A program made the position numbers and the translations under genes. A DNA stretch of 64,000 nucleotides. Origin: Octopus sinensis. Taxonomy: Eukaryota. The stretch spans positions 58,590,001-58,654,000 of the forward strand of contig NC_042998.1 in NCBI RefSeq assembly GCF_006345805.1, given 5' to 3'. Under the pieces are notes generated by a model. That model was not told where the DNA came from and made no database searches. It saw nothing but the letters and a program-made list of their open reading frames with translations. Below are positions 1-45,628 of this stretch, piece by piece. Each line of letters starts with the position of its first letter. The stretch's first letter is position 1.

Positions 1-768
1 CATCATTATTTTAACATCCACTTCTCCATGTTTGCACATGATGGATGAATTTATTGAGGTAAATCATCTATGGCTGGGTGCCTTTCCTGTCACCAACCCC
101 CTCATATTTCCAAGCAAGATAATGTTTCCCCATGGCCTGACATGCATGAATATATGATACAGCTTGTATGATAGTGACATTAATTTACAACTATCCCTCA
201 ATGTCAAAACAAAGAAAAATAAGCACACACATGCATGCACACACATACACACACAAATATGCACAAACACACACACACACATGCACGCACATTCATACAC
301 AGACATGTGTGCGTGTGTGTGTGTGTGTATATATATATATACACACACATATATGTATGACAGGCTTCTTTCAGTTTCCATCTACCAAATCCACTTACAA
401 AGGTTTGGTTGGCCTAAGACTATAATAGAAGACACTTGCTCAAGGTGCCATAGAGAGAGTTTGAACCCGGAATCATGTGACTGGAAAGCAAACTTCTAAC
501 CACACAGCCATGCCTGCACCTATATATAAATATGCAATGGGCTTCATTCAGTTTCCATCTACTAAATTTACATTCAAGGATTTGACAAGCCTAGGGTGAT
601 AGTAGAAGACACTTGTCCAAGGTGCCACATAGTGAGATTGAACACAAAACCATGTAGCTGGAAACAAAATTATTACCCACACAGCCATACCTGGTTCTAT
701 TCACACACATGTATATATGTGTGTGTGTGTGTGTGTATGTGTATATATATATATATATATATAATATA

Positions 769-1989
769 TTGGGTTGACAACGAAGTTCCTGCTGTTTTTT
801 TTTAACTTAAATTTTTTAAAAGGTTTAATAAAAAATAACAGCTAATTAATCAATAATGTATTCACCCCACCCATTTTCGACACGAAAAATTGATCTAACC
901 AAGCTCTCAATTCTGCATCAGTATTGAACAAAATTCCTTGCATTGCCTTTGAAAGAGATCAAAAGAGGTGGAAATTAGGAGAGAACGGTGGGTGTGGCAG
1001 CACTTACCAGCCATGCGTTTGAACAGCTTCCTTGGTCATATTGGCGATATGAAGGCGGGTGTTGTCGTGCAGCAGAAGAACTCCATGCTGACCATTAGGT
1101 CTGTTCTCTTGAATAGCCATGTTGAGTCATTCCATCTTTTGAACATAGAGTTCTGCATTGACTGTTTGGTTCCATTCAAGCAATTCGTAATGGATTATCC
1201 CTTCCCAGTCCCATCATACGCACAAAATCGCTTTAAGCGGATGAAGAGCTTGTTTCACGTGCAGTGTCGCTTGTTTGCCAGGGCTAAGCAATTCCTTATG
1301 CTGCTTCATATTGATGTACAGGCACTATTTTTCAATGCCAGTAACAATTCGGTAAAGAAATCGTTGTTTGTGTCCATGAGTTGAGCAGTGACGAGCAAGC
1401 AAACCAGTGGAGATTATGGCTCGCTGATTTTTGTTGTTGTCACTTAAAGCATGTGGAACCCATGCTCCATACTTCTGAACTTTTCCCATCGAGTTAAGAT
1501 GTTTCTCTATAGCAGTGTGGGAACATTCCATTTTCTCTGCCAGTTCCCTTACTGTTTGACGAAAATTTTCATGCAAAAGTTGATTTAATCGCTCTTCATC
1601 GAACTCAACTGGACGACCAGGATAAGGTGCACCTTTGTGATCAAAATTTCCATTTTTGAACTTGGCATACCAATCATGAGTGGTTCTTTCAGCTATAGCC
1701 CTCTCTCGATAAACAGCACAAATGTCACGAGCAGCTTTTGCGGCCTTAGAATCTTGGTTAAAAGCTAAAAGAAGGAAGTGTCGAAAATGCACATTTTTCT
1801 TAACTTGACATTCCATTTTAATGATCTGAAAATAAACAAAAGCTAACTAAAATTAACTAGTAAAAAAAAACAAAATAGATTCCAGAATGATTCAAAAATA
1901 GAATTCTCAAGAACAATAGATTCCAAAATTTAAAAATGCAATAAATTCCAAAATTAAAAAAAACAACAGGAACTCAGTTGCAGACCCAA
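769..1989 (-). mobile_element. Full-length defective mariner DNA transposon
   Basis: Imperfect ~30-bp TIRs (ttgggttgacaacgaagttcctgctg / caacaggaactcagttgcagacccaa) flanked by TA. Minus-strand transposase with WVPHAL, IVTG(I)EK*, LLHDN; several stops; YSPDLAPSD region collapsed to FSPNFHLF. Confidence 0.93.
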
Positions 1990-3618
1990 TATATGGATTA
2001 TTTGAAGTGGTATACAGATTGTATACATTAAGAAAAGAAGGTAGTCAGGATTTGGGATCTAAAACTAAAGGGAACTAAGGAGCATGGCTATATAATATGT
2101 CTATAATGACTATATGCCCTGGTGATGTTTGATCAGAGGTTAAGGACAGATGAGAATTAATTCTGCAATGCAATCATTTTATTGTACCAGTCCCAATTTG
2201 AATTCCAACTGTTGGCCAATTTGTTCCAAACTTCTTATCTCAATGTAAAATTAACAAAGTGAATGTCATTTATCTCCCCCTTGATCTCTGATATCCTCTG
2301 ACAAATGCCAACCAAGATGGTGTGAATCAGCCAAAGCTTTACCTACTAGAAAGAGCAACCTAAATGCTTGTAAATCATACCCCACTGCTGGTTGTTCAAG
2401 AGCCAAATAAAGGGTAGATTTTCAATCCCAAGATCATTCTGATTCCAAAAAGGTGTAATATGTTTATATAGAGCAAATGTAGATTCAGATACATGGGGCC
2501 CCAGACAGACAGAATTTCATGTTTATTATTATAGATATATAACAATCAAAGAAATCAAGGTGGCAACATCACATTTATTAATTAGTTATGACCATTTCAA
2601 TTACTGATGTAATGGTGACATCAATTAACAAGCTAGATCATATGCACGTAAATTATAGGAGATACATAAAGATTACTTAGGACCATGAAATATTAAAAGT
2701 CATCTTTGTTTGATTTCTTGAATCTCCCTTCTTTTCTCTGTGTGTGTGTGTGTGTGTATTTGTACGTGTGTGCGCACGTGCACCTCCTTGTCTTAACATC
2801 ATGCTGTAAACAAGTGTCACTATCCTACAAACTCTCCTATTTGTTTCTAATCTCTGTGAAACTACGTCTGGCTATGGAGAAATACTAACTTGTTTGGAAA
2901 CAGATGTCGGTTGGCAACAGAAAGACATCCACCTCTAGAAAACCTGCCTTAACAACGAATTCTGTATGACCCATGCAATCATAGGAAAGTAGAAGTTAAA
3001 ATGATGATGGTGACAGATACATGTATGTGTATATAGCACTGTGTAACAAAATTTTAATTTTTTTTGTTTTTAGTCAGTGTTTTTTTTCCTATTTGCTTCT
3101 ATCTAGAAATCAAAGGAAATGGCTACTATTCCCTTCAAACTTTGCTTTTGTGACCTGAATATCAATGTTTTGAAACTGACCTATTTTCTATTTCATTTCA
3201 GACAGATTCAGCGCTGAGTTGCTGAAGCAGAAATATCGTTATAGCAAATATTCTGCTCCATACCACAGATTTGCTTGTTAGCTGCTTGACCATAACCACT
3301 TGAGAATGTCTCTTAGTGGCTGACACTATGTGCATCTCTGATCACGAGCAGGAGTAGTGGGGGAGCATCATAGCCATGTGTTGAGAAGGATTTCTTGAGG
3401 TTTGAATAAATGTAACAAAAGCAAAGTTTGAAGGAAATGTTAACCGTTTTTCATACTTTCTAGGGGCAAGCAAATAGGAAATAAAAGTTGCTATCCAAGG
3501 ATAAAAATTGTGTCATAACATGTAATCAATCACTAATGTGATACTGTAAGTATATATGTTGAGATGGATATATATAAATATACTTATACACATAAAAGAA
3601 AACAATTTCTCTTTTAAG

Positions 3619-3763
3619 TTACAGAGAAATCGGAATTGAACATTACACCTGCAATGATGAGGTCACGTCGAGGAGATTCCACGCCACCAGCTTACCTTCT
3701 GTCATCAATGAATGAGAACAAATCCAAAGCATTGTGTCGGCGCTGTCCAAATGGATTGATTAC
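3619..3763 (+). CDS. PLCE1: PLC-epsilon exon, Y-box region (TEKSELNITPAMMRSRRGDSTPPAYLLSSMNENKSKALCRRCPNGLIT)
   Basis: SSMNENKSKALCRR resembles the PLC-epsilon Y-box motif SSLNENxAKxLCRR. Acceptor ttctcttttaAG at 3617-3618; an in-frame alternative tacAG at 3623-3624 would start the exon at 3625. Ends in phase 2 before ATATCCTTT. Confidence 0.9.
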
Positions 3764-4353
3764 ATATCCTTTAAATACAAACAACCTTTATTTTTTTGTC
3801 TTTTTAACAACAAGAAAAACAATGAAGAACAGGCACATACAAAATACATTTTGAAATTTAAAATTTTCTTTTACATGCTTCTGTAAGTATCTGTGTGAGA
3901 TTCAGTTTTAGCAAAGATGGAAATAGCATCTGAGTTAGTCTCTGTTCAAGAGGCAGAATAATTTAAAAGTTATGTGTACAATATGCTATGTATTTGAATT
4001 GGATATATGAAATGAGATAACCTTAAAAAGATTAGAATCCAGGATATAAAAATGCTCTAAGAAGTGAATCAAAAAGTCATGAGGAGACAGAAACTGAAAG
4101 AAGCCCATCGTGTGTATATATATATATATGTGTGTGTATCCACCATTGCTTGACAACCGATGTTGGTGTGTTTATGTCCCCAAAACTTAGCAGTTCAGCA
4201 ACGGAGGCTGATAGAATAAATACCAGGCTTACAAAGAATAAGTCTTGGGGTCGATTTTTTCAACTAAAGATGGTGCCGCAAGATGACTGAAATGTGTAAA
4301 AGAGCAAAAGAATAAAAGAGTACACACACACACACAAAAACACAATTATATAT

Positions 4354-4413
<60 letters not shown>

Positions 4414-4840
4414 TTATGTAGTAAGGTTTCAACAAGTAGAATAGCACTCAATCAGCTAAGAGAGTAGAGATAATGCTATAATAAAAACCACAAGTCTTGT
4501 TAATTACAGCTATCCCGGGTTTCCTGGTTGAAATATTTAAAGGTTTTGGCCACAAAGTCCCAGGTAGTTGTAATTAACAAGGCTTGTGGTTTTTATTATT
4601 ATTATATATATATATATATATACATATTATTTTATTCTTTTACATGTTTCAGTCATTTCACTGCGGTTATGCTGGAGCACTACCTTAAAGGGTTTTAGTT
4701 GAGGAAATCAACCTCAGGATTTATTCTTTGTAAGCCCAGTACTTATTCTATCAGTCTCTTTTGCCGAACTAAGTTACTCTGATGTAAACATACCAACATC
4801 GGTTGCCAAATGATGGTGGGGGACAAACACAGACACATAA

Positions 4841-4871
<31 letters not shown>

Positions 4872-5058
4872 ACGGGCTTCTTTCAGTTTCCCTCTACCAT
4901 ATCTACTCACAAGGCTTTGGTCAGCCTGGGACTATAGTAGAAGACACTAACCCAAGGTTCCACACAGTGGGACTAAATCCAGAACCATGTGGTTGGGAAT
5001 CAAGCTTCTTTCCATACAGCCATGCCTGCACCTATAAAGTCACACCTGTGCCCATACT

Positions 5059-5225
5059 CAATCACTAGTATGATACTGTAAGTATATATGATGAGATGGA
5101 TGTAAATACATTGAAATGCATAAATGAAAGCAGAGAAATTGGAACTGAATGATATTCCTGCAATGATGAGATCATAGCAAGAAGATTCCCCTCTACCTGC
5201 TTACCTTCTATCATCAATGAATGAG
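5059..5225 (+). pseudogene. Decayed partial duplicate (pseudo-exon) of the 3619-3763 exon plus upstream intron
   Basis: Aligns to 3527-3716. Translates AEKLELNDIPAMMRS*QEDSPLPAYLLSSMNE versus TEKSELNITPAMMRSRRGDSTPPAYLLSSMNE; in-frame TAG at 5175-5177; about 80% nucleotide identity over 96 nt by manual count. Confidence 0.9.
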
Positions 5226-6223
5226 TAGGGTGGTTGAATAAAAAATCATGGCCTTGGCTGGTCTTACTTCTGAAAGAACTGTCTTGAAAACAAATCTGAG
5301 AATTCTGCCCCCACACACAAACCTCACAGGAATAAATGTGTAATGAAGGTTGGTGGATAGGTGGATAGGTGGATAGAATCCATGGATGGATAGAAGTTTC
5401 AAATTCCAAAACACTGAAGTGATTTTCTGAAGTGAAATTGTGCCTGAAATTGCAAACTGCCAACTTTGAACTGAAATTTAATTTCATAAATGTAATTGTT
5501 TCAAACTCAATTTTCAGCCCTTTTAAAATTTCATTTTAATCCAAAATTTAATTTCAGTTTATTAAAACTAGAATAACATTTGCCTTTTGATTTTGATTTC
5601 ATGAAGTATTACAACCTTTACTAAATATTAAATCAACAGTGTGTTAATGAGTCAGTACATTAGTGAATGACTTGAGTGGGGTGCAAATCAAATATATTTG
5701 AGGAATCAGCTTGCTGGAGATAAAAATCTTGTTGTGGTGTCAGGATGTTAACCTTTTTTTTTATCATATTCTGTTGAAACTTTGTTTCAATTAATTGTTT
5801 AAAATATGAAGAATTTAACCTGTTGCTTGGAACAAATTAACATGAAATTTTGATTGGAGATTTTAATTTAGATTACTTAAAAGCAGGAAGTTGTGTCATA
5901 GAACCAGATGCATTTCAGGTGAGAAGTTGTCAAGAGGGTTTAAAAGAGGATTAAGTGTAAGTGGAGTAGCTGATGAAATTTTGGGAAAGTTTTATAAATC
6001 TGCTTGCGATTTTTTATGTCAATAAGAGATGTAAATGACAGTGAATTATACAGGCTGTTGAAAATCTCAAATATTCAGTGTTGTACTAGTTAAATTGGTA
6101 CAGACAAATGAAAGAATTCACAAAAAGTTAACAATGAAATCACTGACAACAGCAACTTTACCCTTTAGTATTTAGATTTCTCTGTCAAAAGTTATGTTTG
6201 TTTATTAACATTGTTTTGAATTA

Positions 6224-6732
6224 CCATAAATCCTCAAGTACAGTCTGCACTTGAGTATAATATGCAGGGAATTTTTAGGGGGTGGTACTTCTGAAAAACC
6301 TAAATCTTGTGTATAATGCTCATCCCTTCTCTAACTTGAGTCGTGCGTAATTAAGCCAGCAGCACCTAGTCGAACAAACACTTCCGCGCATGCATAATAC
6401 AATAACGGTGATGTTCTTAATTGTTATATGGGAATATAAATATGTTTGCAAATTGTTTTTGTTACATGTTATTCTATGTTCTGAATACTTTTATTTTAAT
6501 AAATGTTGCTTACTGCAAGTTATGGACGATTCTTTTATGACTTCATTGCTTTCAGGCTTAGCTTAAGGTATTTTCTCGCCCGACATCACAAAATGCGTTT
6601 GAATAAACATTGCCGGACAGCAAATAGAGACTCGGACATTGCTTAGAAAATATTTTTCATTTTTAACCTCGTATATAGTACGCACTAGGGATTTTGGGGA
6701 AAAAAATGCGGATTATACTTGAGGATTTATGG
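6224..6732. mobile_element. pogo/Tigger-like MITE, copy 1
   Basis: TIRs ccataaatcctcaagta / tacttgaggatttatgg with TA flanks; opposite orientation to 47734-48245. Confidence 0.75.
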
Positions 6733-8157
6733 TACGCATGCATTACCTTTGTAGTTTTGTGATTTCAATGAAGTGATTGCTTATTTTTAAACTGACTTCC
6801 TGGGATAGGTATGAGAGGACAGGTTTGACCAGTTTGAACATAAAGCAGGTAGAAATATTTGGGGCTGAATATGGCTGTTTTAAATACTAAAGGGTTAAAG
6901 TATTCAAATGGAAGTTCTCAGTGTATGACATGAGATTGAGAAGCAATCTATAATGATTGTGGTTTTGTTATCTTCCCAATTTCAGAGAACTCAAACTCAA
7001 CACTTCAAAGTCCTTTTGTTATTCCATACTTAATAATCATACAGTAATAATTTCTGGCATCCTCTCAATACATATTTTCATATATATAGATTGAGCCTGT
7101 GAATACAGTCTTTTATAGATTACAGACTTTTGACAATTTCATTTAGTAGCCTGGCACCCTGTCAACCCATTTTTTCTGTGGGACTCTTTACTAAGGGTAT
7201 CTTGAATATGTCAAATAGTGCTGAAAGGATCTTAGTTCATTTAGAATTCACCTCCATGCTTTAGTAAGATGTTAAAGAAAACAGTATTATAAAAGAAGAG
7301 TCAAAGGTAGAGGGTGATACATTTTTAGTGAACATACAGAATTTAGTGGTTAGTGTGTTTGGCTCATGGAATCAAGGGTTCAATACCTGGAACAAACAGT
7401 GTATTGTATTTTTGTACAAGAAACTTCATTTCACATTGCTCCACTCTGTTGCAGCAACCATCTAGTGTCCAACTACGATGAGTACCAGCTGGATATTTGT
7501 GCAACCCTCTATCCCTCTAGGTGTCACATCCTGGATGTTCTGATGGCTCAAAGGTGAGGTATTTAAACAATTAATGAGAGCTCAGTTGTGAATTATGTGA
7601 AATATACTTATCAAAAACATGACACAGCATAAATGTTTTCAGTTGTACATACTTAACAACAGTGACTCTGGACATCATGGTAACTTCATCCAAACCTACA
7701 TTAACATGTCGGGATGGATGAAAAGGCAGTGGGGGCAGTAATAATGAGGAAATTTACACTTATCTTTTGTAATCATCATTAATACTACTGAAGGTTTAGC
7801 TAAATGAATGACAGGGATAACTGTGATGATGATGATGGTGGTGGTGGTGGTGATGGTTGTGATGGTGGAGATGATACAACAGAGAGAATGAAGAGGAGTT
7901 GGTAGAGGTAAACAAAAGAAAATGATCATTATGATAATATTGTGACACAACAATAAAGATTGTAATTATAGCAATGATAATCATCATCAGTATGATCAAT
8001 ATCCTTGTGTTGTTCTTGATCATCATCATGATTAAGATGATGATATTATGACAATAATAACAATAATATTGATGAGGATGATAAAAGAAGATGCTGATGG
8101 TGGTGTTGACAATGATGAGAATAATGAACAATTGTTATATTTCCTTAATGATGTCAC

Positions 8158-8282
8158 TCATACAGAGAAACAACTGATGAGAACGTATCCGGCTGGAGTA
8201 AGAATAGATTCTTCCAATTTTAACCCAATGCAGTTTTGGATATTTGGAATACAAATGGTAGCTCTTAATTACCAAACTGAAG
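8158..8282 (+). CDS. PLCE1: PLC-epsilon exon, Y box ([41 protein letters not shown])
   Basis: Hallmark PI-PLC Y-box motif RTYP.G.RIDSSN.NP..FW..GIQ.VALNYQT. AC acceptor upstream, GTAAGA donor at 8283, phase 1. Confidence 0.96.
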
Positions 8283-9752
8283 GTAAGAAGCATGAATATG
8301 AAACTAAAACTTTAGATCTGAAATTATACAGCTGCCTTTTTTTTCTTTTTTTTTTTTCTTCGTTAAAGTCATCAGAGAAGGTGGGATATTATCTTTTATC
8401 TACACAGGTCCTCTGCCTCAGACATGTGAGATTGGTACAGCTGAAACCTAGCCTGGACATCTACAAGTCAATGTCTTCATAAAATGACATTGAGCAGAGA
8501 GGGTCCTGGAAACTTTGTCTGAATGCTTGCATAAGAGGGAATTCGGTTAAAGGCCCTCAAGAATCAGGTTGTGGTGTTAAACAGGATGACTTAGTAGGGT
8601 CACTACTAAAACTGAATAAACGAGAGTGTGGACTCAGAAAATTCTTTGTAAAATCTGCTATTTGTTTGCAGGATTTTTTTTTTTGTTTTTATTTGTTTCA
8701 ATCACTTGACTACAGCCATGCTGGAGCACTGCCTTGAAGAAATTTTAGTCAAATGAATTCACCCCAATACTTATTCTATTGGTCACTTTTGCTGAACTGC
8801 GAGGTTACTGGGATGTAATCACACCAACAACTGCTGCCAAGCAGTGGTGGGAACAAACACAAAGACACTTACATGCATCATCATCGTCATAATCATCATC
8901 ATCATCATCATCACCATCAATGTCCATCCTCCATTCTTGCATGGGTTGGACAGTTTGACAGGAGCCGGCCTGGTTAAAGCCTACACCAGGCAACTGTCTG
9001 TTTTGGCATAGTTTTTATAGCTGGTTGCCCTTCCTAACACCAACCACCCTGTAGAGTGGACATTTTATGTGACACCAGCACAAGCGAGGTCAGTTTTGGC
9101 ATGGTTTTTACACCTAGATGCCCTTCCAAATGTCAACTACTAACAGGGATTTGGTCAGTCCAAGGGTATAGTAGAAGACACTTGCCCAAGGTGTCATACA
9201 CTGAGCCTGAACCCAGAAACATGTGGTTGGGAAGTAAGCTTTTTACTACATAGCCATGTCTGCACCTATGAATCAAATTTTGTAATCTTTGAACAGATTT
9301 CATATATCAAGTGGTGTTAGTATTGTTATTTAGAGATTTAAGACTAAATAGAAGGATTACTGAAATGATAACAGAGTGCTTGACTTCACAGATGAGGCAA
9401 AATATAGACATGGGAATTGTTAATAATGAAATGTCATGGGATAAAATTACGAATAATACAGGGCAACACTAAGTGTGCCTAAGTGCTCTAAATATAGCAA
9501 ATTTTTTTCAGGGGGAAGAGGTTAGTCATTTATATTCTACTATTGGTACAAGGCCTTAAATTTTGGGGTAGGAGTTAAGTCGATTACATCGACCCCAGAG
9601 CTCAACTGGTACTTATTTAATTGACCCCAAAAGGATGAAAGACAAAGTCAACCTTGGCAGAATTTGAACTCAGAACCTCAAAACAGACGAAATGCCACTA
9701 AGCATTATTCCCAGTGTACTAACAATTCTGCCAACTCGGTGTCTTAACAACG

Positions 9753-9878
9753 GTGATGATGATGATGATGATTATGAGTACGACGATGATGATGACGATG
9801 ATGATGACGACAATGATGATGATGACAATGATGATGATGACAATGACGATGATGATGACAATGATGATGATGAGGACA

Positions 9879-9910
<32 letters not shown>

Positions 9911-9912
9911 AA
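9753..9912. repeat. (GAT/GAC/AAT)n trinucleotide microsatellite
   Basis: Direct reading of the sequence. Confidence 0.95.
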
Positions 9913-10659
9913 TTTCTAGTTTTGTTACAAGGCCAGTGATTTTTAGTGGGAAGGGCTTAGTCAAGCACATCAACCCAAGTATTTGACTGGTATATTATTT
10001 TATCGGCCTCTGAAAGGATGAAGTACTGGAAGAAGTACTGCAAGTCATTTTTTTTTTCACAACACTCTATTGAGTTTGCCAGCCAAGTTTCACCTCCAAT
10101 AAAACAACATAGCACACATTCTCACATAACTGATACACACCAGCCACTCACAACAACTTACCATTGTCCAAACATTTGACCTAAATCTCCAGTCTGAGGA
10201 TAGCTAGCTTTTACAAGCATTAAAGACATTGAAAAGAAGTCATTAGTGCTGGTTACCCAGCCCTTAAAATAAATACATTAAAATAATGTGCAGTATGATC
10301 TTTTGTTAGGTGGAGGTATAGAAAATTTGGGAATGATACATAATGGTTAAGCTATGTGCATGATTTAGGTCATCAGAGCTGACTTGAGACAACATGACAG
10401 CAATAGCAATAAATGTTGGCCCTTCTTTACAAAATTTTGCAGAGCCCTTATTTATGCCTGCCTGAAATAAGAGATATTTAAAGAAAAGGAAAATAGTAAT
10501 TGCCTTCTTAGTATCTCTTATTTCTAAAACTCCAAACAGCTTAGATATAGTAGAATATTGTTGTGGTTTTAAAATTACCTTCCATCATAGTTAATTGGAA
10601 AGTAATTAAAAAGAATAGTGATTAACTTTAATATGAAAATATTTCCCTTTTACTTTCAG

Positions 10660-10823
10660 ACACAGCCATGGCACTGAATACGACATTGTTTGAACAGAAT
10701 AGAAAATGTGGACTAGTATTGAAACCTGAAGTTATGTGGGATAAGAATCATGTCATGTACACACGATTCAGTCCATTTGATAAAGAATTTGATGGGATTC
10801 ATGCAACGGTGCTCACACTTCAT
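10660..10823 (+). CDS. PLCE1: PLC-epsilon exon, end of Y box and linker to C2 (DTAMALNTTLFEQNRKCGLVLKPEVMWDK...LTLH)
   Basis: tttactttcAG acceptor and GTAAGT donor at 10824; phases fit both neighbours; F..N..CG.VLKP..W motif. Confidence 0.96.
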
Positions 10824-11006
10824 GTAAGTGTTCTTTCTAAGTCAGGCTAACATTTTCTTACAGCTTCAGAAATTTTCTTTTAACCAAGTCATGATGTTTT
10901 GATGTCAAGTTTTTCTCATTTACAGTAATGTTTAGAATAATATATTTCAAGAAAGAATATTTTTAAAAATGCTTTTGATCTGGTTTGCTATAAGAGAATA
11001 AATAGA

Positions 11007-11053
<47 letters not shown>

Positions 11054-12238
11054 ATAGATAAATAAATAAATAGATAAAATCAGCAAAACACATGAAGATT
11101 TCTTATATAGGTGTAAGGACAATTTACATCTTACAGCTGCATAATTTACATACGTAAAAGAACACATGCAAAATTTGAACTAAAAATTTAAGGTGTAACT
11201 AAAATTAGTCCAACACTTTCCTGTACCAACCATCTCAACATTTATGAGCAATAACATATTTACAACATTAGGACAAGAGACATGGGTGCAAGCATGTCAT
11301 TTTCTTTTTATCTTTTTTTTAGTCAGGAAGGAAAGAATTACCCATGACCCTCAGTGGGCCCCTGAGATAAGTGGAAAGGAGAGAGGAAAGTATCCTCAAA
11401 CCAGAGACCTGGCCTGAATGCTTACACCAATGTAAACTCAGCTAAAGGAACTCACAGCACCAGGTGGTGGTGTTAAACAATGTGATCGACTGAGTCTATC
11501 CCCTAAGCAGTCCATAGCAGGATTTGAACTTAAAAGGCAAAAAGAAACTAGAATAGCTACCACAGAATATCCAGTCTGATGTCCTTACAGTTTCACTAAC
11601 CCATATTCTGGACTGATATTTTGTTAATGCCAAAAAAAATGCAAGACAAAGTTGATATCAGCAGGATTTGAACTCAGGTTCTGAGAGCCAGAACAAATAC
11701 ACAAGGCATTCTCTGATGCTCTAATGGCTAAGAACATCACTTTGAAATTACATGTTTTTCATTTTAATCCCACTTTGCATTACTTAGAGCAAGTGTCTTC
11801 TCTCACAGTTTGAGAATAAACAAAGCCTTGTTGGGTTAAATTTGGTTGATGGAAATTATGTGGAGACCTTAGAAGGATCATTCCTGTTCCTAGATTGTAG
11901 ATTTGATGTGTTGCCCTGTTTAACACCACATCCTTGTCTTTGGATGCCTTAGGCAGAACCCACTCTGTCTCAATTATCCTGAATATAACTTCTTTCCTTC
12001 TTCCTGCCATTCACAGAGACTTGAAAATTGGCACAGTTACTGCCCCTCCCACTCTCTTAAAACAGTAAAACATTATTTTAAAATACGCAAGTCAAAATAT
12101 ACTTGCTCAAACAAAACAACAATGAAGACAATACAAGAAAACCATAAGATGCAGTGAAAAACAGTAGAGACTTATGGTGGCACACCAGCATGGCCATACC
12201 TATAAGGACTTAGTGGTACTGTGGATCTGTGGAACTAA

Positions 12239-12629: not shown

Positions 12630-14420
12630 TGAATTGATAAATTACAACTGCATCATTGTGTTCATTACTAGTTAGATGACTTCTCTTAGATGCAAAGTGT
12701 AAGGAGTAGCTAATTACTAGTGGTAAACTTTTGGGATTTATCTGGGATCAGTTAAAGTTTTAGAAAGCAGATTTAGATTAAATGTTTCAGAATGTTCATA
12801 CGGGAGAAGCCTTATGAAGGATTTCAAATTACTTATGTTCAAGTCAGCTTTCAAGGACCAACATTCAGCAACCGTTGGACAACAGAAGGGCTGTAATTTC
12901 TCCCTGTCCCTTCTACTACAGAAATAGATGTTCCTCTGAACTTGCTGAGGCTTAACATTTGGAATGACTCAAGGACTGTTGTTACATGCTGCTCGTGTTT
13001 AGAGTACAGTGAGATGCAGTGTTAAGCATATGTGTTTTTGTTGTTGAATGAGGGAGGATTAACAATGTCTCTCCAAGAGGATGCTTTTGAGGTGTTCCTT
13101 CATAAAATCAGTGTCGGTTTGGTATGTGATATCTAGCTTGACTGTGAATGATACATAATTATGGAAGATTATGGAGGAATGAAATCATCCATATATGCAA
13201 GGCTGTTGTTGCTCGCATAACTAGGACAGTGTTGCCACAACACATACAGACATCCTAGACTACATAAAAAGACCACCCTAATGACTATCATTAAGCCACT
13301 TATCATCATCCTCCATCTTCTGACCCACAGACTTGATGTCTCCTCGCTCTGCCTCTTCTGCACTACCAATCAATTTTCAAGAGTACTGACGAAATAAATC
13401 AATTAGTAACTTCAAATAAACTAAGTTTCCATGTACTAAATATGTCACATCATCAAACACCAGGTCTTTAATTCTACTAGTGTTTCATTCCATCCAATAA
13501 CAACTGTTATTTCTCTAAGAACCTGAATTAACTACAGTTTGGTAGTGTAAAAACATGCCTTTTTTTCTTTGAGAATATAAATAATCTATTGTGATGGAAA
13601 TGTGCCAAGCATCTTCAAACAAAATTATGATGTTAAAAATTTACTTTTGAATATCATTATTGAAATACAGTGCCAGAACAATAATGGCTTGATCTAAAAG
13701 AAACTTGCGTGAAATATTAATAAAGCAGCTGGGTTCATATTATAAAATACATTAATAAATGAGAGAACGACTGAATAAGTAATACTGTTTATACAGTGCT
13801 ATATCTGCTTAAACTCATAGAAAGAGATGACAGGAAATTAGCATCATAAAACGAAAATAATTAATCAACTAAAGTTTTAGAATTGTTATCATTGTGATGG
13901 GTTCTCAGTGATAGAAGGAGAAAACCCTGAATGACAAATGTTCAGTGCAGAAGTGGGTGTTTTAAAAAGTTCTGATAAAGAATTAAGCATATCAATAGAT
14001 AGATATGAAGCTTGTGTTAATTCTTCTAGAGTGAATCTTTGGAGAAGTTGAATATGATTAAACACAGTAACTAATTAACATAGTTAAATATGTCTTGCAA
14101 ATAAGACTTAAGACATGGTTTTAGTTTTTAAGATGTTAAGCAGTTTGTTAAAGACACTATCTACTATATTGAGCTGGTCAAACAAATTCCTCATTTGCTC
14201 AAGATTGCATTTGAAGGATTCCATGAAAATTCTTAAAAATGAAGAATAAATTACACTTTGAGCTTGATCAGAATTAGAAGGAAGATAAATGAGAAAAATC
14301 AGCTTCTACTTAGAAAATATGGATATTAGTATTCAGAAAGACTCAATTGGTTTATTGTGGTGGGGGGGGAGAAAAATATTAAGTTGATGCATCTTTGAAT
14401 TATGATTCCAAACTCTTTAA

Positions 14421-14625
14421 CACTTTAGCATTTAAACTGGTCATATCCGGCCCAAATATTCTGCTATTTTATGTTCAAACTGACTAGATCCAGCCTCTTA
14501 CACCTCATCCTGCAATGTCACTCTAAAAATAAACAATCATCTCATCAAAATCTCAAAGCTACAAGATAAGTCATGACTAATTAAAGATAATCATTACATT
14601 TGGGAGTAATCAGAATGCTAAAGGA
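14421..14625 (+). mobile_element. piggyBac-type MITE (family 1)
   Basis: TTAA on both sides; (c)ctttagcatt / aatgctaaagg termini; homologous copies at 24548-25143, 43145-43357 and 50273-50493. Confidence 0.7.
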
Positions 14626-15487: not shown

Positions 15488-15643
15488 TTGATCTCAGGTC
15501 AGTATGTAAATCCAAGTCTGAGTGCCCACACACAAGTGGAAGTAGAAATCATTGGTATTCCTGTTGACTGTACAAAACACAAAACCAAAGTTATACAACG
15601 TAATGCCTTAAACCCTATATGGAATGATGTCTTCAATTTTCAG
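15488..15643 (+). CDS. PLCE1: PLC-epsilon exon, C2 domain part 1 (LISGQYV...EVEIIGIPVDC...RNALNPIWNDVFNFQ)
   Basis: tttctAG acceptor, GTGGGT donor at 15644, 156 nt phase 0-0; ISGQ, G.P.D and NP.WN C2 motifs. Confidence 0.96.
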
Positions 15644-17529: not shown

Positions 17530-18884
17530 CAGGGTGTTTCAAAAAATTTGATATCATTTGAGATGTAAATATCACAGAAACTACACAGTCAAATCAAATG
17601 AAACTAAACAGGCAACAAAAGATTTATTCCTCCTAATTTGAATGAGAAATTTAAAGGTATGTGGACTCCATGAACGATGTCGCAAATGTTCAATATGCGC
17701 ACCACCTGAGACATGGCACATGTCAAGTTGGTAGTCCAGCTCCTCCTAAACATGCTACAGCATGTCTTGGGTAACAGTCTCCAATGTGGTAGTGATTCTC
17801 TGCTTGAGGTCCTCTAGGCTTGCAAGAAGATGGGGGACATAGACCAGACCCTTCACATAATCCCAGAGAAAAAAATCACAAGGTGTCAGATCAGGTGAAC
17901 GTGGTGGCCATTTCAACAGTACATTGTCTTCATCATCAGCATGTCCGAACCATCTCCCTCACAGATTGTCATTGAGATAAGCCCGCACAGTGAGGTTCCA
18001 GTGAGGTGGAACCCCATCCTGTTGAAAAATGAAGTCTTTATGTTCGTTTGCAATGAGCTCATCCATTAGCCAGTTCTGAAGCATTTGCAGACAAACATCG
18101 TTGGTCACATTTCCCTCAAAGAAAAACAGGCTATGAAGATGCCTCTTGGAGATGGCACAGAACACATTCACTTTTGGTGGGTTCCACTCGTGCTCAACTG
18201 TGGCATAAGGATTTTCTTCACCCCCAAATGCAAACATTATGCTTATTGACTTTGCCATTCTTATGAAATGTGGCCACATCACTGAAAACAAGACGTTCCT
18301 TGAACTCAGCTTCTTTAAGTTTCTCTTCCATATCAACACAGAATTGTCTGCACTTTCACTTGTCATCTTCAGTTATGGCCTGAATAAACTGCATCTTGTA
18401 GGGTTTCATTAGCAAGTGTTTCCTCAAGATTCACCAAAAAGTCATTGGAGGAATCCAGGTTTCCAGCCTTGTTCTTGTTATAAACTTCTTGGGGCTTCAC
18501 AAGAGTTTTTGGCAAACCTGCTTGACCATCTCTTACAATGTTAGTGATCATCCAGATCCTTTTGCCTTGCACAGATAGCCTTCCTCTTTGAATTTTTTGT
18601 GCCATGTCCAAATCTGCATTGCTGTTGGTGACTTTTAAAGAAATCTCTCACCAATGCACACTGCACAGTACTGTTCGACTGTGTTCGAGCATACTCCAAC
18701 ACACAAAATGCCTTTTCTCTTCCAGTGAATGCCATTTCTATACCTGAAAAGATAAACATATCAAACACTAAACATAAAATTTTGACTTGCTTTTACAGAT
18801 GCTGTTAAACTTTGAAATCATTTGAACAAGAATTGACAAAGTTATTAGTTTGTGAAATGATTTCAAATTTGTTGAAACACCCTG
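17530..18884 (-). mobile_element. Full-length defective Tc1/mariner element of the DD41D (rosa/Visitor)-like group
   Basis: TIRs cagggtgtttcaaaaaatttga / tcaaatttgttgaaacaccctg with TA on both sides. N-terminal EKAFCVLEYART, catalytic QQDGVPPHW and WPPRSPDLTPCDFFLW; frameshifts and stops. Confidence 0.92.
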
Positions 18885-20663: not shown

Positions 20664-20766
20664 ATTATGTTTGTTGATCTGGCATTCATCCGTTTCCTCG
20701 TCATTGACACCAGTACTGGCCATATGGTCCTGCAGCGAATAATTCCACTCAAACATTTGCGTCCTG
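20664..20766 (+). CDS. PLCE1: PLC-epsilon exon, C2 domain part 2 (IMFVDLAFIRFLVIDTSTGHMVLQRIIPLKHLRPG)
   Basis: Not in the ORF track. ttctttctccttAG acceptor, GTAAGA donor at 20767, 103 nt phase 0-1; DL.F.RF.V and QRIIPLK.L..G motifs. Confidence 0.95.
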
Positions 20767-21864: not shown

Positions 21865-22067
21865 GATATCGACATGTTCGGTTACGCAACCCCCTAAATC
21901 AGCCAACTGAACTAGCAACTTTATTCATTTACTCTAAACTGGAAGAAGACCAACTGGATCAGTGCAACAACATAGACCTTAATGCTGATATTCTTGGCAA
22001 ACGGCGGTCGCTTCTAGCGAAAGTCAAAGACTTTTCTGATGTCTCCAAAGTTGATGCTGGGAAAGAT
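21865..22067 (+). CDS. PLCE1: PLC-epsilon exon, end of C2 and linker (GYRHVRLRNPLNQPTELATLFIYSKLEED...AGKD)
   Basis: ttgcAG acceptor, GTAAGT donor at 22068; GYRH..LRN motif; phase 1-0. Confidence 0.96.
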
Positions 22068-26067: not shown

Positions 26068-26208
26068 TTATCTACGAACATTGTCACTACAGTTGGTAAA
26101 CAGAAACGGAGAATGTTTATTGTCACCATATTCGGCCTCAGCACGCCAGATGACTATGTAATTTTAAAGATCTCCCAAGATACATCCGTCTGTGATGCTA
26201 TTGCATTG
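26068..26208 (+). CDS. PLCE1: PLC-epsilon exon, RA1 N-terminal half (LSTNIVTTVGKQKRRMFIVTIFGLSTPDDYVILKISQDTSVCDAIAL)
   Basis: Pyrimidine tract plus ataAG acceptor (an in-frame AG at 26102-26103 is also possible); GTAAGT donor at 26209; phase 0-0; strand-strand-helix pattern of an RA fold. Confidence 0.85.
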
Positions 26209-26249
26209 GTAAGTAACACTAGTTGCTGATGACAATGAAAAAAATATTG

Positions 26250-26500
26250 ATGATGATGATGATGATGATGAGGTGGATGATGATGATGATGAGGAGGAGG
26301 AGGAGGAGGAGGAAGATGATGATGATGATGATGATGATGACGACGACAACGACAACGACGACGACAACGATGATGACGATGATGATGACGACGATGACAA
26401 ATGTAATGATAATGAAGTAAACGAGGATATTGCTGAATGTGATGGTGATGATTGTAATGATGATGAGAATGAATGTGATGATGATAATGATGAAGTAATT
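26250..26500. repeat. (GAT/GAG/GAC)n low-complexity tract just inside the intron after the RA1 exon
   Basis: Direct reading; begins ~40 nt after the GTAAGT donor at 26209. Confidence 0.9.
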
Positions 26501-27387
26501 ATTATTCTGAAACATCCAGCTCAACTCTAATTAAGAAGACATGAGAGCTGAACACATACAGACAGTCATCTACAGATTTATTGCTCTCTAGCTCTGAATA
26601 TTGCAGGTGTTATAACAGTTATAAGAAATCCCAGCATTGCAGAATTGATGAATTTTGTTGACTTGCAGTGTTGCTTCCAGTTCATATGGCAGTTTTCCCA
26701 TAATAGACTAGTTTCTCATCCAGGGAAAGATACTTGTCTTGTTTCTTTAATTATCAGAATATATATATTTGTAAGTGTGTGTATTGTGTAAATACAATGA
26801 TTAATAAGAAAGGCAACACAGGAGGAACAAAGTTTGCCATACATATATATATATATTGAATTATATATATAATCAAAATAAGCAACAAGTATATCTGAGG
26901 TAGAGTGGTACAATTGTTTCATGCTACTTCATTTTATTAAACACTGTAAGTATTACATCAGTTTTAAAATGTCGAGCAATCTTCAGCCACATATGGAAAT
27001 TTTCCAATCAAGTGGACAATGCACATTCTTATCTCTATTTCGTTTGCCAACATTATAAAGAGGGTAGATATATAGACAGAGAGGCTGATTTCATTCTTAA
27101 GAACATGATAGTAGTAAATTTACTCCCTGACTGTAGATTTTTTCACTTTGTTATTTAGATCTGTCAGTGGGGAGATGGGATTTTATTTTTGGTTGGATGG
27201 AGACAAAGAATTTTTCTATTTATAGATATATGAAGGGGTAGAACAAATGTCAAAACCATAAACTTATTCCCATTCAGAGGAACCTAGCCCAGATACATTT
27301 GAATGCACTATAGCAAAAAGGTAGTATGTTGAAGTTAGAGGGCTAGGGGAGCATAGACTACTAGTGCACTAGAGGTTTTAATGTCTC

Positions 27388-27610
<223 letters not shown>

Positions 27611-27614
27611 CAAA

Positions 27615-28070
27615 TCAAATCAAAATCGATGAACATCAATGGAATTTGTATTTTTGTGGTACCAGTGCCGGTGGCACATAAGAAAACCATCCGAACGTGG
27701 CCGTAGCCAGTACCACATCGACTGGCGTCCGTGCTGTGGGCACATAACAAACACCATCCAATCGTGGCCATGCCAGCCTTGCCTGGCCTCTGTGCCGGTG
27801 GCACGTAAAAAACACCATCCGAGCGTGGCCGTCTGGCACGCTCGGCCTCGTCTGGCACCTGTTCGCCAGCCTCGTCTGGCACCTGTGTCGGTGGCACATA
27901 AAAAGCACCCACTACACTCACGGAGTGGTTGGCGTTAGGAAGGGCATCCAGCTGTAGAAACACTGCCAGATCTGACTGGCCTGGTGCAGCCTTCGGGCTT
28001 TCTAGACTCCAGTTGAATCGTCCAACCCATGCTAGCATGGAAAGCGGACGTTAAACGATGATGATGATGA
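27615..28070 (+). mobile_element. RTE LINE 3' UTR copy with internal tgccggtggcac repeats
   Basis: Shared core aggaagggcatccagctgtagaaacactgccagatc...gcatggaaagcggacgttaaac(GAT)n. Further copies near 1-140(-), 8875-9135(-), 18925-19155(+), 45155-45297(+), 51100-51342(+), 59470-59703(+), 60355-60730(-). Confidence 0.75.
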
Positions 28071-28686
28071 TATATATATCTCTTATTATAAAAGGCAGAT
28101 TTTTTCTGCCTCCCTTTGTCTCTTATAGAAATCTACAATATAGGATTTCTTCAATTACAATTTACCTAGCATTTTTAAGAGTAGAATACATCGGGTCATG
28201 CCAGGTCCAGTTTTTCAAATTTCAACCCCAATTAAGCAAAATTTCGAGAAAACTCACATTGTGGTGTGTAAGTGAAGTGCTTTTCTTAGTGTGGGCTACA
28301 GCACACACACACAAACGGAGCGAACTGCTTCACTGATGCTATCACCCTAATTTCTCCTCCTTTCTCTTTGCATGTGTGCAACGATTAAAGTGAAAGTATT
28401 TGAGAAGTGTACCTTAAACCACTACTCAAAAAAAAAACAACACAGCAAACAGAAACAAATAAATACATAACGATTTACTCCTCACACAATTTCTTCAATT
28501 AGAGTTTACCTATGATTTTTCAAAGTACTTCCATTCGGTCATGGCATACAAAATTTCTTTCAATTTCACCCCCATTTCAGAAAAAATTCGAGACAACTAA
28601 ATATTTTACCATTTCACTCTTTCACTCTGCATTCCCACTTCCTCTTTACACTGTAAGCTAACGTGTGTGTATGTGTGTGTGCGTGT

Positions 28687-28736
<50 letters not shown>

Positions 28737-28776
28737 GTGCGTGTGTGTGTGTGTATGTGTGTGAGTGTGTGACAGG

Positions 28777-29459
28777 AAAGTTTTTTAGGACGAATATAAG
28801 ATCTAAAGTATATCCAAGTAGCAGAAAGATCACCCAAAAGTGTATATAGATATTTAAATGTATTTATATATTCATCTATACACAGATTTATGTATAATGT
28901 GTGTGTATATATTTCCATAGAGGTAACCTTTCACTCCATACAAAGTTTTTTAGGACGAATATAAGATCTAAAGTATATCCAAGTAGCAGAAAGATCGCCC
29001 AAAAGTATATATAGATATTTAAATGTATTTATATATTCATCTATACACAGGTGTATGTATAATGTGTGTGTATATATTTCCATAGACGTAACCATTCACT
29101 CCGCACAAAGTTTTTTAGGATGAAAATAAGATCTAAAGTTATCTCTAAGTAGCACAAAGATCGCCCAAAAGTGTATATAGATATATAAATGTATTTATAT
29201 ATTCATCTATGCACACATGTATGTATAACGTGTGTGTATATATTTCCATAGAGGTAACCATTCACTCCATACAAAGTTTTTTAGGACGAAAATAAGATCT
29301 AAAGTTATCTCTAAGAAACAGAAAGATCGCCCAAAAGTGTATATAGATATTTAAATGTATTTATATATTCATCTATACACACATGTATGTATAATGTGCA
29401 TGTATATATTTCCATAGAGGTAACCATTCAATCCATACAAAGTTTTTTAGGACGAAAAT
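28777..29459 (+). repeat. Tandem array of 165-166-bp units (4 full copies plus a partial one) inside the Helitron
   Basis: Unit starts aaagttttttaggacgaa at 28777, 28942, 29107, 29273 and 29439. Confidence 0.95.
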
Positions 29460-29706
29460 ATTTTTATATAAAAGAAAGGTTGTGTGTCTGTCTACTCCGA
29501 TTTAGATTTCTAACTACTCCCACATTTTGCGATGCAGTTTAACCAAAACCGGGTATCTTATAGTCGTGATTCATATCGACCCCTTCTGGGTATTAGCGCG
29601 CGTCTACGATGAGTCTACGATTTTACAAATAATTTACCATCATTTTTTTCCATTTTAATGCATATTTTTTTAATAAAGGGAAGTAACTCTCAAACTTCAC
29701 ACCAAT

Positions 29707-30625: not shown

Positions 30626-30863
30626 ACATTGTATAAAAGGGCTTAGTAAAATAAATTACTTTGCCACATACTGAACTCATTAGAAATAGCAGCCAAAAAA
30701 AGATTTTTTAACCATTTCTAATACTTAAAGAAAATTTCTCTGAGAGAAATTTTCTTTAAGTATTAGAAATGGCTAAAAAATCTTTTTTTTTTTTGGCTGC
30801 TATTTCTAATGAGTTCAGTATGTGGCAAAGTAATTTATTTTACTAAGCCCTTTTATACAATGT
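30626..30863. repeat. Near-perfect 238-bp palindrome
   Basis: acattgtataaaaggg.../...cccttttatacaatgt; 3-nt loop TGA at 30741-30743. Confidence 0.95.
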
Positions 30864-37865: not shown

Positions 37866-38060
37866 GCTTTACTAAAGGCAGGGAAAAGTGAAGAAAAAGT
37901 TGCGAATTATGTCTTGGTTGAAGAAGTTCAAAGTGGTTGGGAGAGAAAAGACCAGGAAAAGCCTTGTACTCAGAGAATTCTGGATATGTCTGAAAAACTA
38001 CTAGCATCTCAAAATAAATGGAAGGGATCAGGCAAATTTATCCTTCGAAAAATGAGTGAT
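37866..38060 (+). CDS. PLCE1: PLC-epsilon exon, RA1 C-terminal half (ALLKAGKSEEKVANYVLVEEV...QNKWKGSGKFILRKMSD)
   Basis: ttttcgtttttaaAG acceptor, GTAAGT donor at 38061, 195 nt; YVLVEEV and W.G.GKFIL RA motifs. Confidence 0.94.
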
Positions 38061-43767: not shown

Positions 43768-43917
43768 AAAAAAATGGACTCAACTGATGATGACTCAGCA
43801 GTTTGGGATTCAGAAGAGAATATGTTTTTAGTATGTGTATATAATGTCTCACCAGATCAGCCCTATACAGTATTTAAAGCACCAGTATCAAGTACAGCTC
43901 AAGATATAATCACTCAG
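43768..43917 (+). CDS. PLCE1: PLC-epsilon exon, RA2 N-terminal half (KKMDSTDDDSAVWDSEENMFLVCVYNVSPDQPYTVFKAPVSSTAQDIITQ)
   Basis: ttgttctttttAG acceptor, CAG|GTAGAT donor; close match to the PLC-epsilon RA2 pattern F.V.V..VSP.QP.TV.KAP..STAQD.I.Q. Confidence 0.96.
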
Positions 43918-45382: not shown

Positions 45383-45628
45383 GCTATGATGAAATCTCGG
45401 CGCATCAACATGTGTGATCCACGGGATTTTGTTCTTGTACAAGAATTGGAAGTATTGTTCACATCAGACACAGCTAGCAGTCAGAGAAACAGTCGGACAG
45501 TACAGAAAAGTGAACGGCACGTATTAAGCAATGAAGATAATGTATATCAAGCTCAAAATGAATGGAAAACATTTGGGAAATTCATTCTCCTGCACAGAAA
45601 CAAAGTGGATGATGAATTTGAGTTATGT
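45383..45628 (+). CDS. PLCE1: PLC-epsilon exon, RA2 C-terminal half (AMMKSRRINMCDPRDFVLVQEL...VYQAQNEWKTFGKFILLHRNKVDDEFELC)
   Basis: ccattctAG acceptor, GTAAGT donor at 45629, 246 nt phase 0-0; D.VL..E and V.QAQ..WK..GKFIL motifs. Confidence 0.95.

What the first reader, a model, noticed from the sequence alone, without database searches (positions are those of the whole stretch)
3764..8157. Minor-spliceosome AT-AC intron in the catalytic Y box of PLC-epsilon
Seen: donor ATATCCTTT, branch TTCCTTAAT about 9 nt from a terminal AC, and exact in-frame restoration of LITHTEKQ. No GT donor follows the upstream exon. Established: AT-AC U12 introns are a small minority of introns, are slowly spliced and are missed by GT-AG gene predictors. 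Inference: minor-spliceosome activity could limit output of active enzyme, and automated gene models are probably wrong here. The intron is long (4394 bp) and TE-filled.
Basis: partly seen in the sequence, partly recalled or inferred. Interest (0 to 1): 0.7.

Follow-up and report, generated by a model that had tools for sequence, protein, structure and literature searches.

The report
Conserved AT-AC minor intron in PLC-epsilon
A 4.4-kb intron in the catalytic domain of a mollusc-like phospholipase C-epsilon gene carries textbook minor-spliceosome (U12, AT-AC) signals; it sits at the same codon in a gastropod, an annelid and a priapulid, is missing from vertebrates, and coincides with the point where several published gene models break, so it is real and useful for annotation but is an ordinary member of a known intron class.

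Summary
The upstream exon ends at 3763 (…GGATTGATTAC) and is followed by ATATCCTTT. TTCCTTAAT lies at 8141-8149, and 9 nt separate its second A from the end of the terminal AC (8156-8157). Joining 3763 to 8158 gives …[20 protein letters not shown]…, which aligns without gaps to rat PLC-epsilon. The gene has the PLC-epsilon layout (Y box, C2, two RA domains) on the + strand from 3625 to about 45630. Its nine other introns in the window are ordinary GT-AG.

The same codon position and phase carry U12 signals in six other genomic loci: Plakobranchus (gastropod), Priapulus, Ridgeia (annelid, GT-AG U12 subtype) and three unnamed assemblies. Only the first 9 nt, the branch motif and the last two bases of the intron are conserved. 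The intron is absent from vertebrate PLCE1 and from arthropod-like loci, and PLCE1 is not in the human/mouse minor-intron gene list.

Published models for Plakobranchus and Ridgeia break at this intron, and those for Pomacea and Bulinus start at the Met just after it.

Not tested: the mRNA junction itself, and the idea that slow minor splicing limits enzyme output, which the literature disputes. "TE-filled" is only partly true: 32% is dispersed repeats and no TE protein domains were found.

Verdict: a real new member of a known kind, of modest interest.

The parts
3625..3763 (+). Upstream Y-box exon (…KSELNITPAMMRSRRGDSTPPAYLLSSMNENKSKALCRRCPNGLI + AC of a Thr codon). Its acceptor is an ordinary U2 type (ctcttttaagttacag|AG); an alternative AG would start the exon at 3619.
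3764..3772 (+). U12-type 5' splice site ATATCCTTT (AT-AC subtype), an exact match to the consensus
   Evidence: identical 9-mer in L002, L003, L007, L008 and GTATCCTTT in L009
3764..8157 (+). The intron: 4394 nt, phase 2, inside codon AC|T (Thr)
8141..8149 (+). U12-type branch-point sequence TTCCTTAAT (branch A at 8147 or 8148); 9 nt from the second A to the intron end
8156..8157 (+). Terminal AC of the intron
8158..8282 (+). Downstream Y-box exon (T)[41 protein letters not shown], ending at an ordinary donor AAG|GTAAGAAG
4085..5038 (.). Dispersed repeat copies inside the intron (4085-4328 and 4620-5038) with 70-80% identical copies at about 329-693, 33994-34383, 36626-37020, 40834-41233 and elsewhere; AC/AT microsatellites lie between them
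5055..5225 (+). Decayed partial duplicate of the upstream exon plus part of its preceding intron (72% identical to 3523-3716). It has an in-frame stop, lacks 23 nt present before the acceptor of the real exon, and has no donor
6162..6904 (.). Further dispersed repeat copies inside the intron (6162-6342, 6495-6735, 6737-6904), with copies at about 47731-48242, 43136-43354, 14415-14564 and 50338-50497
10660..10823 (+). Next exon (end of Y box); GT-AG introns on both sides
15488..15643 (+). C2-domain exon
20664..20766 (+). C2-domain exon
21865..22067 (+). Exon at the end of C2 and the following linker
26068..26208 (+). RA1 exon
37866..38060 (+). RA1 exon
43768..43917 (+). RA2 exon
45383..45628 (+). 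RA2 exon (3' boundary approximate)

Best explanation
Positions 3764-8157 are a genuine U12-type (minor-spliceosome) intron of the AT-AC subtype. It lies in phase 2 inside a Thr codon of the Y half of the catalytic domain of a PLC-epsilon gene, and the organism is most like gastropod molluscs.

Inferred mechanism, from what is established for this intron class: U11 and later U6atac pair with the 5' ATATCCTTT; U12 pairs with TTCCTTAAT and bulges a branch adenosine at 8147/8148; the first AC about 10 nt downstream is used as the 3' site. This joins 3763 to 8158 and produces ...[17 protein letters not shown]....

The intron is old. It occupies the same position with the same signals in a gastropod, a priapulid and an annelid (where it has switched to the GT-AG U12 subtype). 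It has been lost cleanly in vertebrates and in arthropod-like lineages. In the window's lineage it has grown to 4.4 kb by picking up dispersed repeats, microsatellites and a decayed partial copy of the upstream exon.

Shown here: the signals, their placement, collinearity, conservation, absence elsewhere, and the broken gene models in relatives. Inferred: use of the minor spliceosome and of this exact junction in mRNA.
For: (1) Sequence: an exact ATATCCTTT donor, TTCCTTAAT followed by 9 nt to the intron end, and a terminal AC.

(2) PWM scores fall within the range of 77 human minor introns and are extreme for the window. Bona fide minor introns in the published list carry near-identical strings, for example SCN8A TTCATATCCTTT and mouse Tcea1 TTTTCCTTAATG.

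(3) The joined exons give PI-PLC-Y at E 1e-22, or 1.5e-32 with the next exon. They align without gaps to rat PLC-epsilon across the junction: [23 protein letters not shown] against [23 protein letters not shown].

(4) The nine other introns of the gene are GT-AG, most with GTAAG-type donors, and none has a U12-like branch motif.

(5) The orthologous position and phase carry U12 signals in L002, L003, L007 (Plakobranchus), L008 (Priapulus), L009 (Ridgeia, GTATCCTTT...TTCCCTGAC...AG) and L001 (acceptor only). Intron lengths range from 246 to 4394 nt, and only the splice motifs are conserved.

(6) NCBI's Priapulus model contains ...GVIAHTELQ..., which is exactly the AT-AC junction.

(7) Intronless orthologues keep the residues on both sides of the junction, so the junction restores the ancestral protein.
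Against: There are no transcript data from the window's species, so the junction and the spliceosome used are inferred.

The distance from branch to 3' site (9-10 nt) is, to my knowledge, at the short end of the range considered optimal for U12 introns.

A second AC at 8162-8163 would also be in frame and would delete His-Thr. The His-Thr codons (CAT/CAC + ACN) force it to be present in every species, so its presence is not informative.

Each motif on its own occurs at chance frequency in the window.
Confidence: 0.9

Rival explanations
1. The gap is removed by the major spliceosome using cryptic GT-AG sites. The only in-frame pair is the donor TTT|GTCTTTTT at 3798 with the AG at 8166-8167.
For: That pair is in frame, with a net gain of 24 nt (one search lists the sites; the arithmetic is from the coordinates).
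Against: The donor is very weak: it lacks the AAG at +3 to +5 that most other donors of this gene carry. The product would replace the conserved THTE with 12 unrelated residues, yet HT(E/Q/A) is kept in all orthologues, including intronless ones and rat. Neither site is conserved in other species, whereas the U12 signals are.
Confidence: 0.02
2. It is a U12 intron, but the main 3' splice site is a nearby alternative: the AC at 8162-8163 (in-frame loss of His-Thr) or the AG at 8164-8165 (frameshift).
For: These dinucleotides lie 15-18 nt from the branch adenosines, which to my knowledge is still within reach of the minor spliceosome.
Against: To my knowledge, minor-intron 3' sites are normally the first usable dinucleotide about 10-13 nt from the branch. 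His-Thr is conserved in every orthologue. The spacing between branch motif and terminal AC is kept at 9-11 nt in all seven loci. The Priapulus model uses the homologous first AC.
Confidence: 0.05
3. The short gene models are right: transcription starts inside or after this 'intron', giving a protein that begins at MRTYPAG, and the upstream exon belongs to a separate gene or is a relic.
For: Deposited models in Pomacea, Bulinus, Plakobranchus and Ridgeia begin at that Met.
Against: Such a protein would lack the X box and the first third of the Y box. The upstream exon is conserved as protein and is followed by a perfectly conserved U12 donor in six loci. In Plakobranchus the upstream model simply reads through the donor to the first stop. 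In Ridgeia the upstream model carries RasGEF, an EF-hand-like domain and the X box, which is the missing N-terminal half of PLC-epsilon. Vertebrate and arthropod-like genes encode the two parts in one exon.
Confidence: 0.03

Closest known systems
AT-AC subtype U12-type (minor) introns of animals, for example those in SCN8A, ALG3 and TCEA1 listed in the minor-intron gene catalogue (Olthof et al. 2019, PMC6717393)
   Same: The same 5' consensus |ATATCCTTT and the same TTCCTTAA(C/T) branch motif close to a terminal AC. There is a U12-like branch motif that none of the gene's U2-type acceptors has, the phase is not 0, it is the only such intron seen in the part of the gene within the window, and its position is conserved over long evolutionary distances.
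   Different: The host gene differs: PLCE1 is not among the human/mouse minor-intron genes. Splicing by the minor spliceosome has not been shown for this intron.
Minor introns of the vertebrate phospholipase C family (PLCB1-4, PLCD1/3/4, PLCH1/2, PLCZ1; '60% of PLC genes', PMC6865273)
   Same: The same gene family, known to be enriched in minor introns.
   Different: The examples I saw listed are the GT-AG subtype (PLCD1 GCAGTATCCTTT, PLCB1 AGAGTATCCTTG, PLCB4 CAAGTATCCTTA). In the one paralogue I could inspect (fish PLC-eta1, L010), the Y-box exon runs straight through the homologous position, so its minor intron lies elsewhere. Positions in the beta, delta and zeta genes were not tested.
Vertebrate PLCE1 (rat structures 9ax5, 6pmp)
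   Same: Orthologous protein: E 6e-86 against 7e-44 for the best PLC-beta, with the same Y-C2-RA-RA layout. The next intron, after ...ALNYQT(D/E), appears to be shared.
   Different: There is no intron at this codon. Many independent vertebrate genomic fragments encode ...[23 protein letters not shown]... in one exon.

Membership tests
U12-type (minor-spliceosome) intron, AT-AC subtype | 5' splice site matching |(A/G)TATCCTT | tested here: met
   ATATCCTTT at 3764-3772. PWM score 12.9 bits, second best of the + strand and within the human training range.
U12-type (minor-spliceosome) intron, AT-AC subtype | Branch-point sequence TCCTTAAC-like, about 10-20 nt from the 3' splice site | tested here: met
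   TTCCTTAAT at 8141-8149, with 9 nt from the second A to the intron end. Score 9.4 bits; only 11 of 63,989 + strand positions score as high.
U12-type (minor-spliceosome) intron, AT-AC subtype | Terminal dinucleotides AT...AC with exact restoration of the reading frame | tested here: met
   gap-free alignment to rat PLC-epsilon across the junction.
U12-type (minor-spliceosome) intron, AT-AC subtype | No U2-type polypyrimidine tract and AG at the 3' end | tested here: inconclusive
   Pyrimidine fraction at -23 to -4 is 0.65, much of it the branch motif itself. The other acceptors range from 0.5 to 0.9, so the two overlap. Sequence further upstream is purine-rich and there is no AG at the junction.
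U12-type (minor-spliceosome) intron, AT-AC subtype | Conservation of position and U12 signals in orthologues | tested here: met
   Six other loci, including Plakobranchus, Priapulus and Ridgeia (the last as the GT-AG U12 subtype). Only the motifs are conserved.
U12-type (minor-spliceosome) intron, AT-AC subtype | Excision depends on U11/U12/U4atac/U6atac, and the junction is seen in mRNA | not testable with these tools
   No transcript data for the species. Indirect support only, from the Priapulus NCBI model.
PLC-epsilon (PLCE1 orthologue) | Y box followed by C2 and two RA domains | tested here: met
   Pfam PI-PLC-Y 1.5e-32, C2 1.8e-8, RA 6e-6 and RA 6.2e-7 on the assembled exons. The best solved match is rat PLC-epsilon, E 6e-86.
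PLC-epsilon (PLCE1 orthologue) | N-terminal RasGEF (CDC25) domain, EF hands and X box | not testable with these tools
   These exons lie upstream of the window; nothing matched in 1-3600. In the Ridgeia orthologue the upstream gene model carries RasGEF, an EF-hand-like domain and PI-PLC-X.
Minor intron shared with other PLC paralogues | Same homologous position as the minor intron of PLCB, PLCD, PLCH or PLCZ genes | tested here: not met
   Tested only for fish PLC-eta1 (L010), which has a continuous exon across the homologous site. Beta, delta and zeta were not tested.

The most novel reading that the evidence does not exclude
The intron is a relic from the protostome ancestor or earlier. Lophotrochozoans and priapulids would have kept it because regulated retention of it gates production of catalytically competent PLC-epsilon. 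An unspliced transcript would end 30 codons into the intron and yield a protein with the N-terminal half (RasGEF to X box) but no complete catalytic domain. On this reading the intron is a switch between a GEF-only and a full lipase form, and vertebrates and arthropods lost that switch.
Probability: 0.08. Interest if true: 0.55.

Novelty: new member of a known kind. Interest (0 to 1): 0.3.

Why it matters
There are two practical points.

First, annotation. This single AT-AC intron coincides with the point where PLC-epsilon gene models break in published mollusc and annelid genomes: an N-terminal RasGEF/X-box part is separated from a model that starts at MRTYPAG. Domain inventories and orthology tables for these phyla are therefore wrong at this gene, and the fix is simple.

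Second, evolution. PLCE1 is not a minor-intron gene in human or mouse, so human-centred catalogues do not list this intron. It is shared by molluscs, an annelid (with a switch from AT-AC to GT-AG) and a priapulid, and it has been lost cleanly in vertebrates and arthropod-like lineages. That makes it a tidy example of minor-intron persistence, subtype switching and loss.

It does not reveal a new mechanism.

Tried and rejected
- Chance occurrence of the motifs was considered. The motifs alone are at chance frequency, but their placement and conservation rule chance out.
- I enumerated cryptic GT/AG sites and rejected that route.
- I looked for a second minor intron in the gene. High-scoring donor-like 12-mers at 24512 and 2291 (+) have no matching branch motif or exon and are taken as chance. 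Those at 63052 and 63088 (-) lie in sequence that appears to be repeated in inverted orientation nearby, with no convincing exon.
- Rfam and tRNA scans of the window found nothing.
- Pfam on ORFs inside the intron found nothing.
- Literature searches for PLCE1 together with U12 found no paper on this intron. The supplements of Moyer 2020 and Olthof 2024 that are held hold nothing on it.
- The Pomacea locus could not be fetched.
- L011 and L012 were fetched in the hope of transcript evidence. L011 is an intronless genomic copy, and L012 is too short to reach the junction.
- The species of the window and of L001-L006 could not be named. The window's protein is closest to gastropods: 70-74% identity against about 62% for arthropods.
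Full report
**The observation**

The window reads ...AATGGATTGATTAC|ATATCCTTTAAATAC... at 3763/3764 and ...TTATATTTCCTTAATGATGTCAC|TCATACAGAGAAACAACTG... at 8157/8158. Joining 3763 to 8158 gives ...[62 protein letters not shown]. This matches Pfam PI-PLC-Y at E 1e-22. The frame stays open after the exon until 3851, and the only GT in that stretch is TTT|GTCTTTTT at 3798.

**Is it more than chance?**

The bare motifs are not rare. ATATCCTT occurs three times in the window against 4.0 expected, and TTCCTTAAT once against 1.25 expected. What matters is where they sit.

I built position weight matrices from 77 human minor introns in Table S2 of Olthof et al. 2019 (PMC6717393).
- The donor 12-mer TACATATCCTTT scores 12.9 bits. 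That is the second-best + strand position in 64 kb and the 21st percentile of the human set.
- The branch 12-mer ATTTCCTTAATG scores 9.4 bits, the 25th percentile of the human set. Only 11 of 63,989 + strand positions score as high.
- None of the nine other acceptors of the gene has a branch-like match above 5.7 bits within 45 nt.
- Published minor introns carry near-identical strings, for example SCN8A TTCATATCCTTT and mouse Tcea1 TTTTCCTTAATG.

**The gene**

Segments of two orthologous loci place further exons on the + strand at about 10660-10823, 15488-15643, 20664-20766, 21865-22067, 26068-26208, 37866-38060, 43768-43917 and 45383-45628. The assembled protein has PI-PLC-Y (1.5e-32), C2 (1.8e-8) and two RA domains (6e-6 and 6.2e-7). 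Its best solved relative is rat PLC-epsilon at E 6e-86, against 7e-44 for PLC-beta3. The alignment runs across the junction without a gap: [23 protein letters not shown] against [23 protein letters not shown]. The X box and the RasGEF region lie upstream of the window. All nine other introns are GT-AG, most with GTAAG-type donors.

**Relatives that have the intron**

Genomic loci recovered through exon-sized protein fragments show the same intron at the same codon and phase.

| Locus | Source | Donor | Branch region and 3' end | Length |
|---|---|---|---|---|
| L002 | unnamed assembly | caa\|ATATCCTTT | TTCCCTAAC + 9 nt, ending AC | 396 nt |
| L003 | unnamed assembly | caa\|ATATCCTTT | TCCTTAAC + 9 nt, ending AC | 1296 nt |
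| L007 | Plakobranchus ocellatus (gastropod) | cac\|ATATCCTTT | TTCCTTAAC + 9 nt, ending AC | 2534 nt |
| L008 | Priapulus caudatus | tgc\|ATATCCTTT | TCCTTAAC + 8 nt, ending AC | 246 nt |
| L009 | Ridgeia piscesae (annelid) | caa\|GTATCCTTT | TTCCCTGAC + 10 nt, ending AG | 494 nt |
| L001 | unnamed read assembly | contig too short | GCCTTAAC + 9 nt, ending AC | not known |

Ridgeia therefore carries the GT-AG subtype of a U12 intron at the same place. L001 is a close relative of the window, with 41 of 42 residues identical in the downstream exon.

When the sequences are anchored at the junctions, only the first nine intron bases, the branch motif and the last two bases are conserved. The window's protein is most like gastropod sequences: 70-74% identity against about 62% for arthropods.

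**Relatives that lack the intron**

Four compact, arthropod-like genomic loci (L004, L005, L006, L011) encode ...CRKQPLALVAH(N/T)(E/Q)[10 protein letters not shown]... in one exon. Dozens of vertebrate genomic fragments likewise encode ...[33 protein letters not shown]...NYQTD in one exon, which ends at the next, apparently shared intron. In agreement, the human/mouse minor-intron gene tables list PLCB1-4, PLCD1/3/4, PLCH1/2 and PLCZ1 but not PLCE1. A review gives 60% of PLC genes as minor-intron genes (PMC6865273). In the one paralogue I could inspect, fish PLC-eta1, the Y-box exon is continuous across the homologous site, so its minor intron is elsewhere.

The simplest history is an intron present at least in the protostome ancestor, kept in molluscs, annelids and priapulids, and lost cleanly in vertebrates and arthropod-like lineages. 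A later gain cannot be formally excluded without deuterostome invertebrates and cnidarians.

**Gene models**

- In Plakobranchus, the deposited upstream model ends at L007 7466. That is the first in-frame stop reached by reading through the AT-AC donor (AC|A TAT CCT TTT TCA TAT TGA). The next model (P0020) starts at the ATG of CAACTG-ATG-AGG, 19 nt into the downstream exon.
- Models from Pomacea canaliculata (MMRTYPAG...) and Bulinus truncatus (MRTYPAG...) start at the same Met, and one from Elysia marginata starts a few residues later (MRIDSSN...). Their genomic DNA was not examined; the Pomacea look-up failed.
- The Ridgeia piscesae model also starts there (MRTYPGAL...). In Ridgeia the separate upstream model carries RasGEF, an EF-hand-like domain and PI-PLC-X.
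- NCBI's Priapulus model contains ...GVIAHTELQ..., which is the correct AT-AC junction.

**Inside the intron**

32% of the intron (1421 nt) matches other places in the window. Dispersed repeats lie at 4085-4328, 4620-5038, 6162-6342 and 6495-6904. Segment 5055-5225 is a 72% identical, decayed partial copy of the upstream exon plus part of its preceding intron. That copy has an in-frame stop, lacks 23 nt present before the acceptor of the real exon, and has no donor. There are also AC/AT microsatellites and a low-complexity ATC/GAT-rich stretch just before the branch site. No ORF in the intron hits a Pfam family. "TE-filled" is therefore only partly supported.

**Rival readings**

- The only in-frame GT-AG alternative (3797|GT with AG|8168) uses a very weak donor. 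It would replace the conserved THTE with 12 unrelated residues.
- A second AC at 8162-8163 would delete His-Thr in frame. It is present in all species only because the His and Thr codons contain it. The conserved 9-11 nt spacing points to the first AC.
- The idea that the short models are real is contradicted by the conserved upstream exon and donor, and by the single-exon arrangement in species without the intron.

**Function**

The claim that slow minor splicing limits the output of active enzyme could not be tested. Moyer et al. 2020 state that the rate difference is not large enough to affect expression meaningfully (PMC7367187). Whole lineages also do without this intron. The mechanism I give (U11/U6atac at the donor, U12 at the branch site, first AC as acceptor) is inferred from what is established for the class, not shown here.

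**Verdict**

This is a real, deeply conserved AT-AC minor intron: a new member of a known kind. It has clear value for annotation and some evolutionary interest, but it shows no new mechanism.

Noticed in passing
window 5055-5225 (+): A decayed partial duplicate of the upstream Y-box exon and part of its preceding intron (72% identical to 3523-3716) sits inside the minor intron. It translates as KLELNDIPAMMRS*QEDSPLPAYLLSSMNE, lacks 23 nt present before the acceptor of the real exon, and has no donor.
   Followed up: partly
window 7999-8006 (+): A second ATATCCTT (TCA|ATATCCTTG, 11.7 bits) lies 159 nt before the 3' splice site in low-complexity ATC/GAT-rich sequence. No exon is evident before it, so it is probably chance.
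   Followed up: partly
L007 (Plakobranchus ocellatus GCA_019648995.1) 6710-7466 and 10001-11265; also P0095, P0096, P0124, P0136: Deposited gene models for PLC-epsilon in Plakobranchus and the annelid Ridgeia are broken at this intron. One Plakobranchus model reads through the donor to the first stop, and the next starts at the Met of QLMRTYPAG. Pomacea and Bulinus models start at that same Met, and an Elysia model a few residues later; their genomic DNA was not examined.
   Followed up: yes
L009 (Ridgeia piscesae) 9488-9981: The orthologous intron in this annelid is the GT-AG subtype of U12 intron (caa|GTATCCTTT ... TTCCCTGAC ... CAG|). This is a subtype switch at a conserved position.
   Followed up: yes
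window 1325-1816 (-), 29707-30228 (+), 17959-18366 (-): Transposon-derived ORFs lie in the flank and in other introns: a Mos1/mariner HTH_48 domain (E 2.8e-18) and a Pif1 2B helicase domain typical of Helitron-like elements (E 3.1e-15). The third ORF looks like a Tc1/mariner transposase fragment by eye but had no Pfam hit.
   Followed up: partly
window 24512 and 2291 (+); 63052-63095 (-): Other U12-donor-like strings: AAT|GTATCCTCT, CTG|ATATCCTCT, and two on the minus strand 36 nt apart. None has a matching branch motif or an adjacent exon. The minus-strand pair lies in sequence that appears to be repeated in inverted orientation nearby (about 63471-63608).
   Followed up: partly
window 26208-37866: An intron of about 11.6 kb between the two RA1 exons holds the Helitron-like ORF and other long ORFs without family hits. 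Further small exons between 22067 and 45383 may have been missed by the similarity-based model.
   Followed up: no
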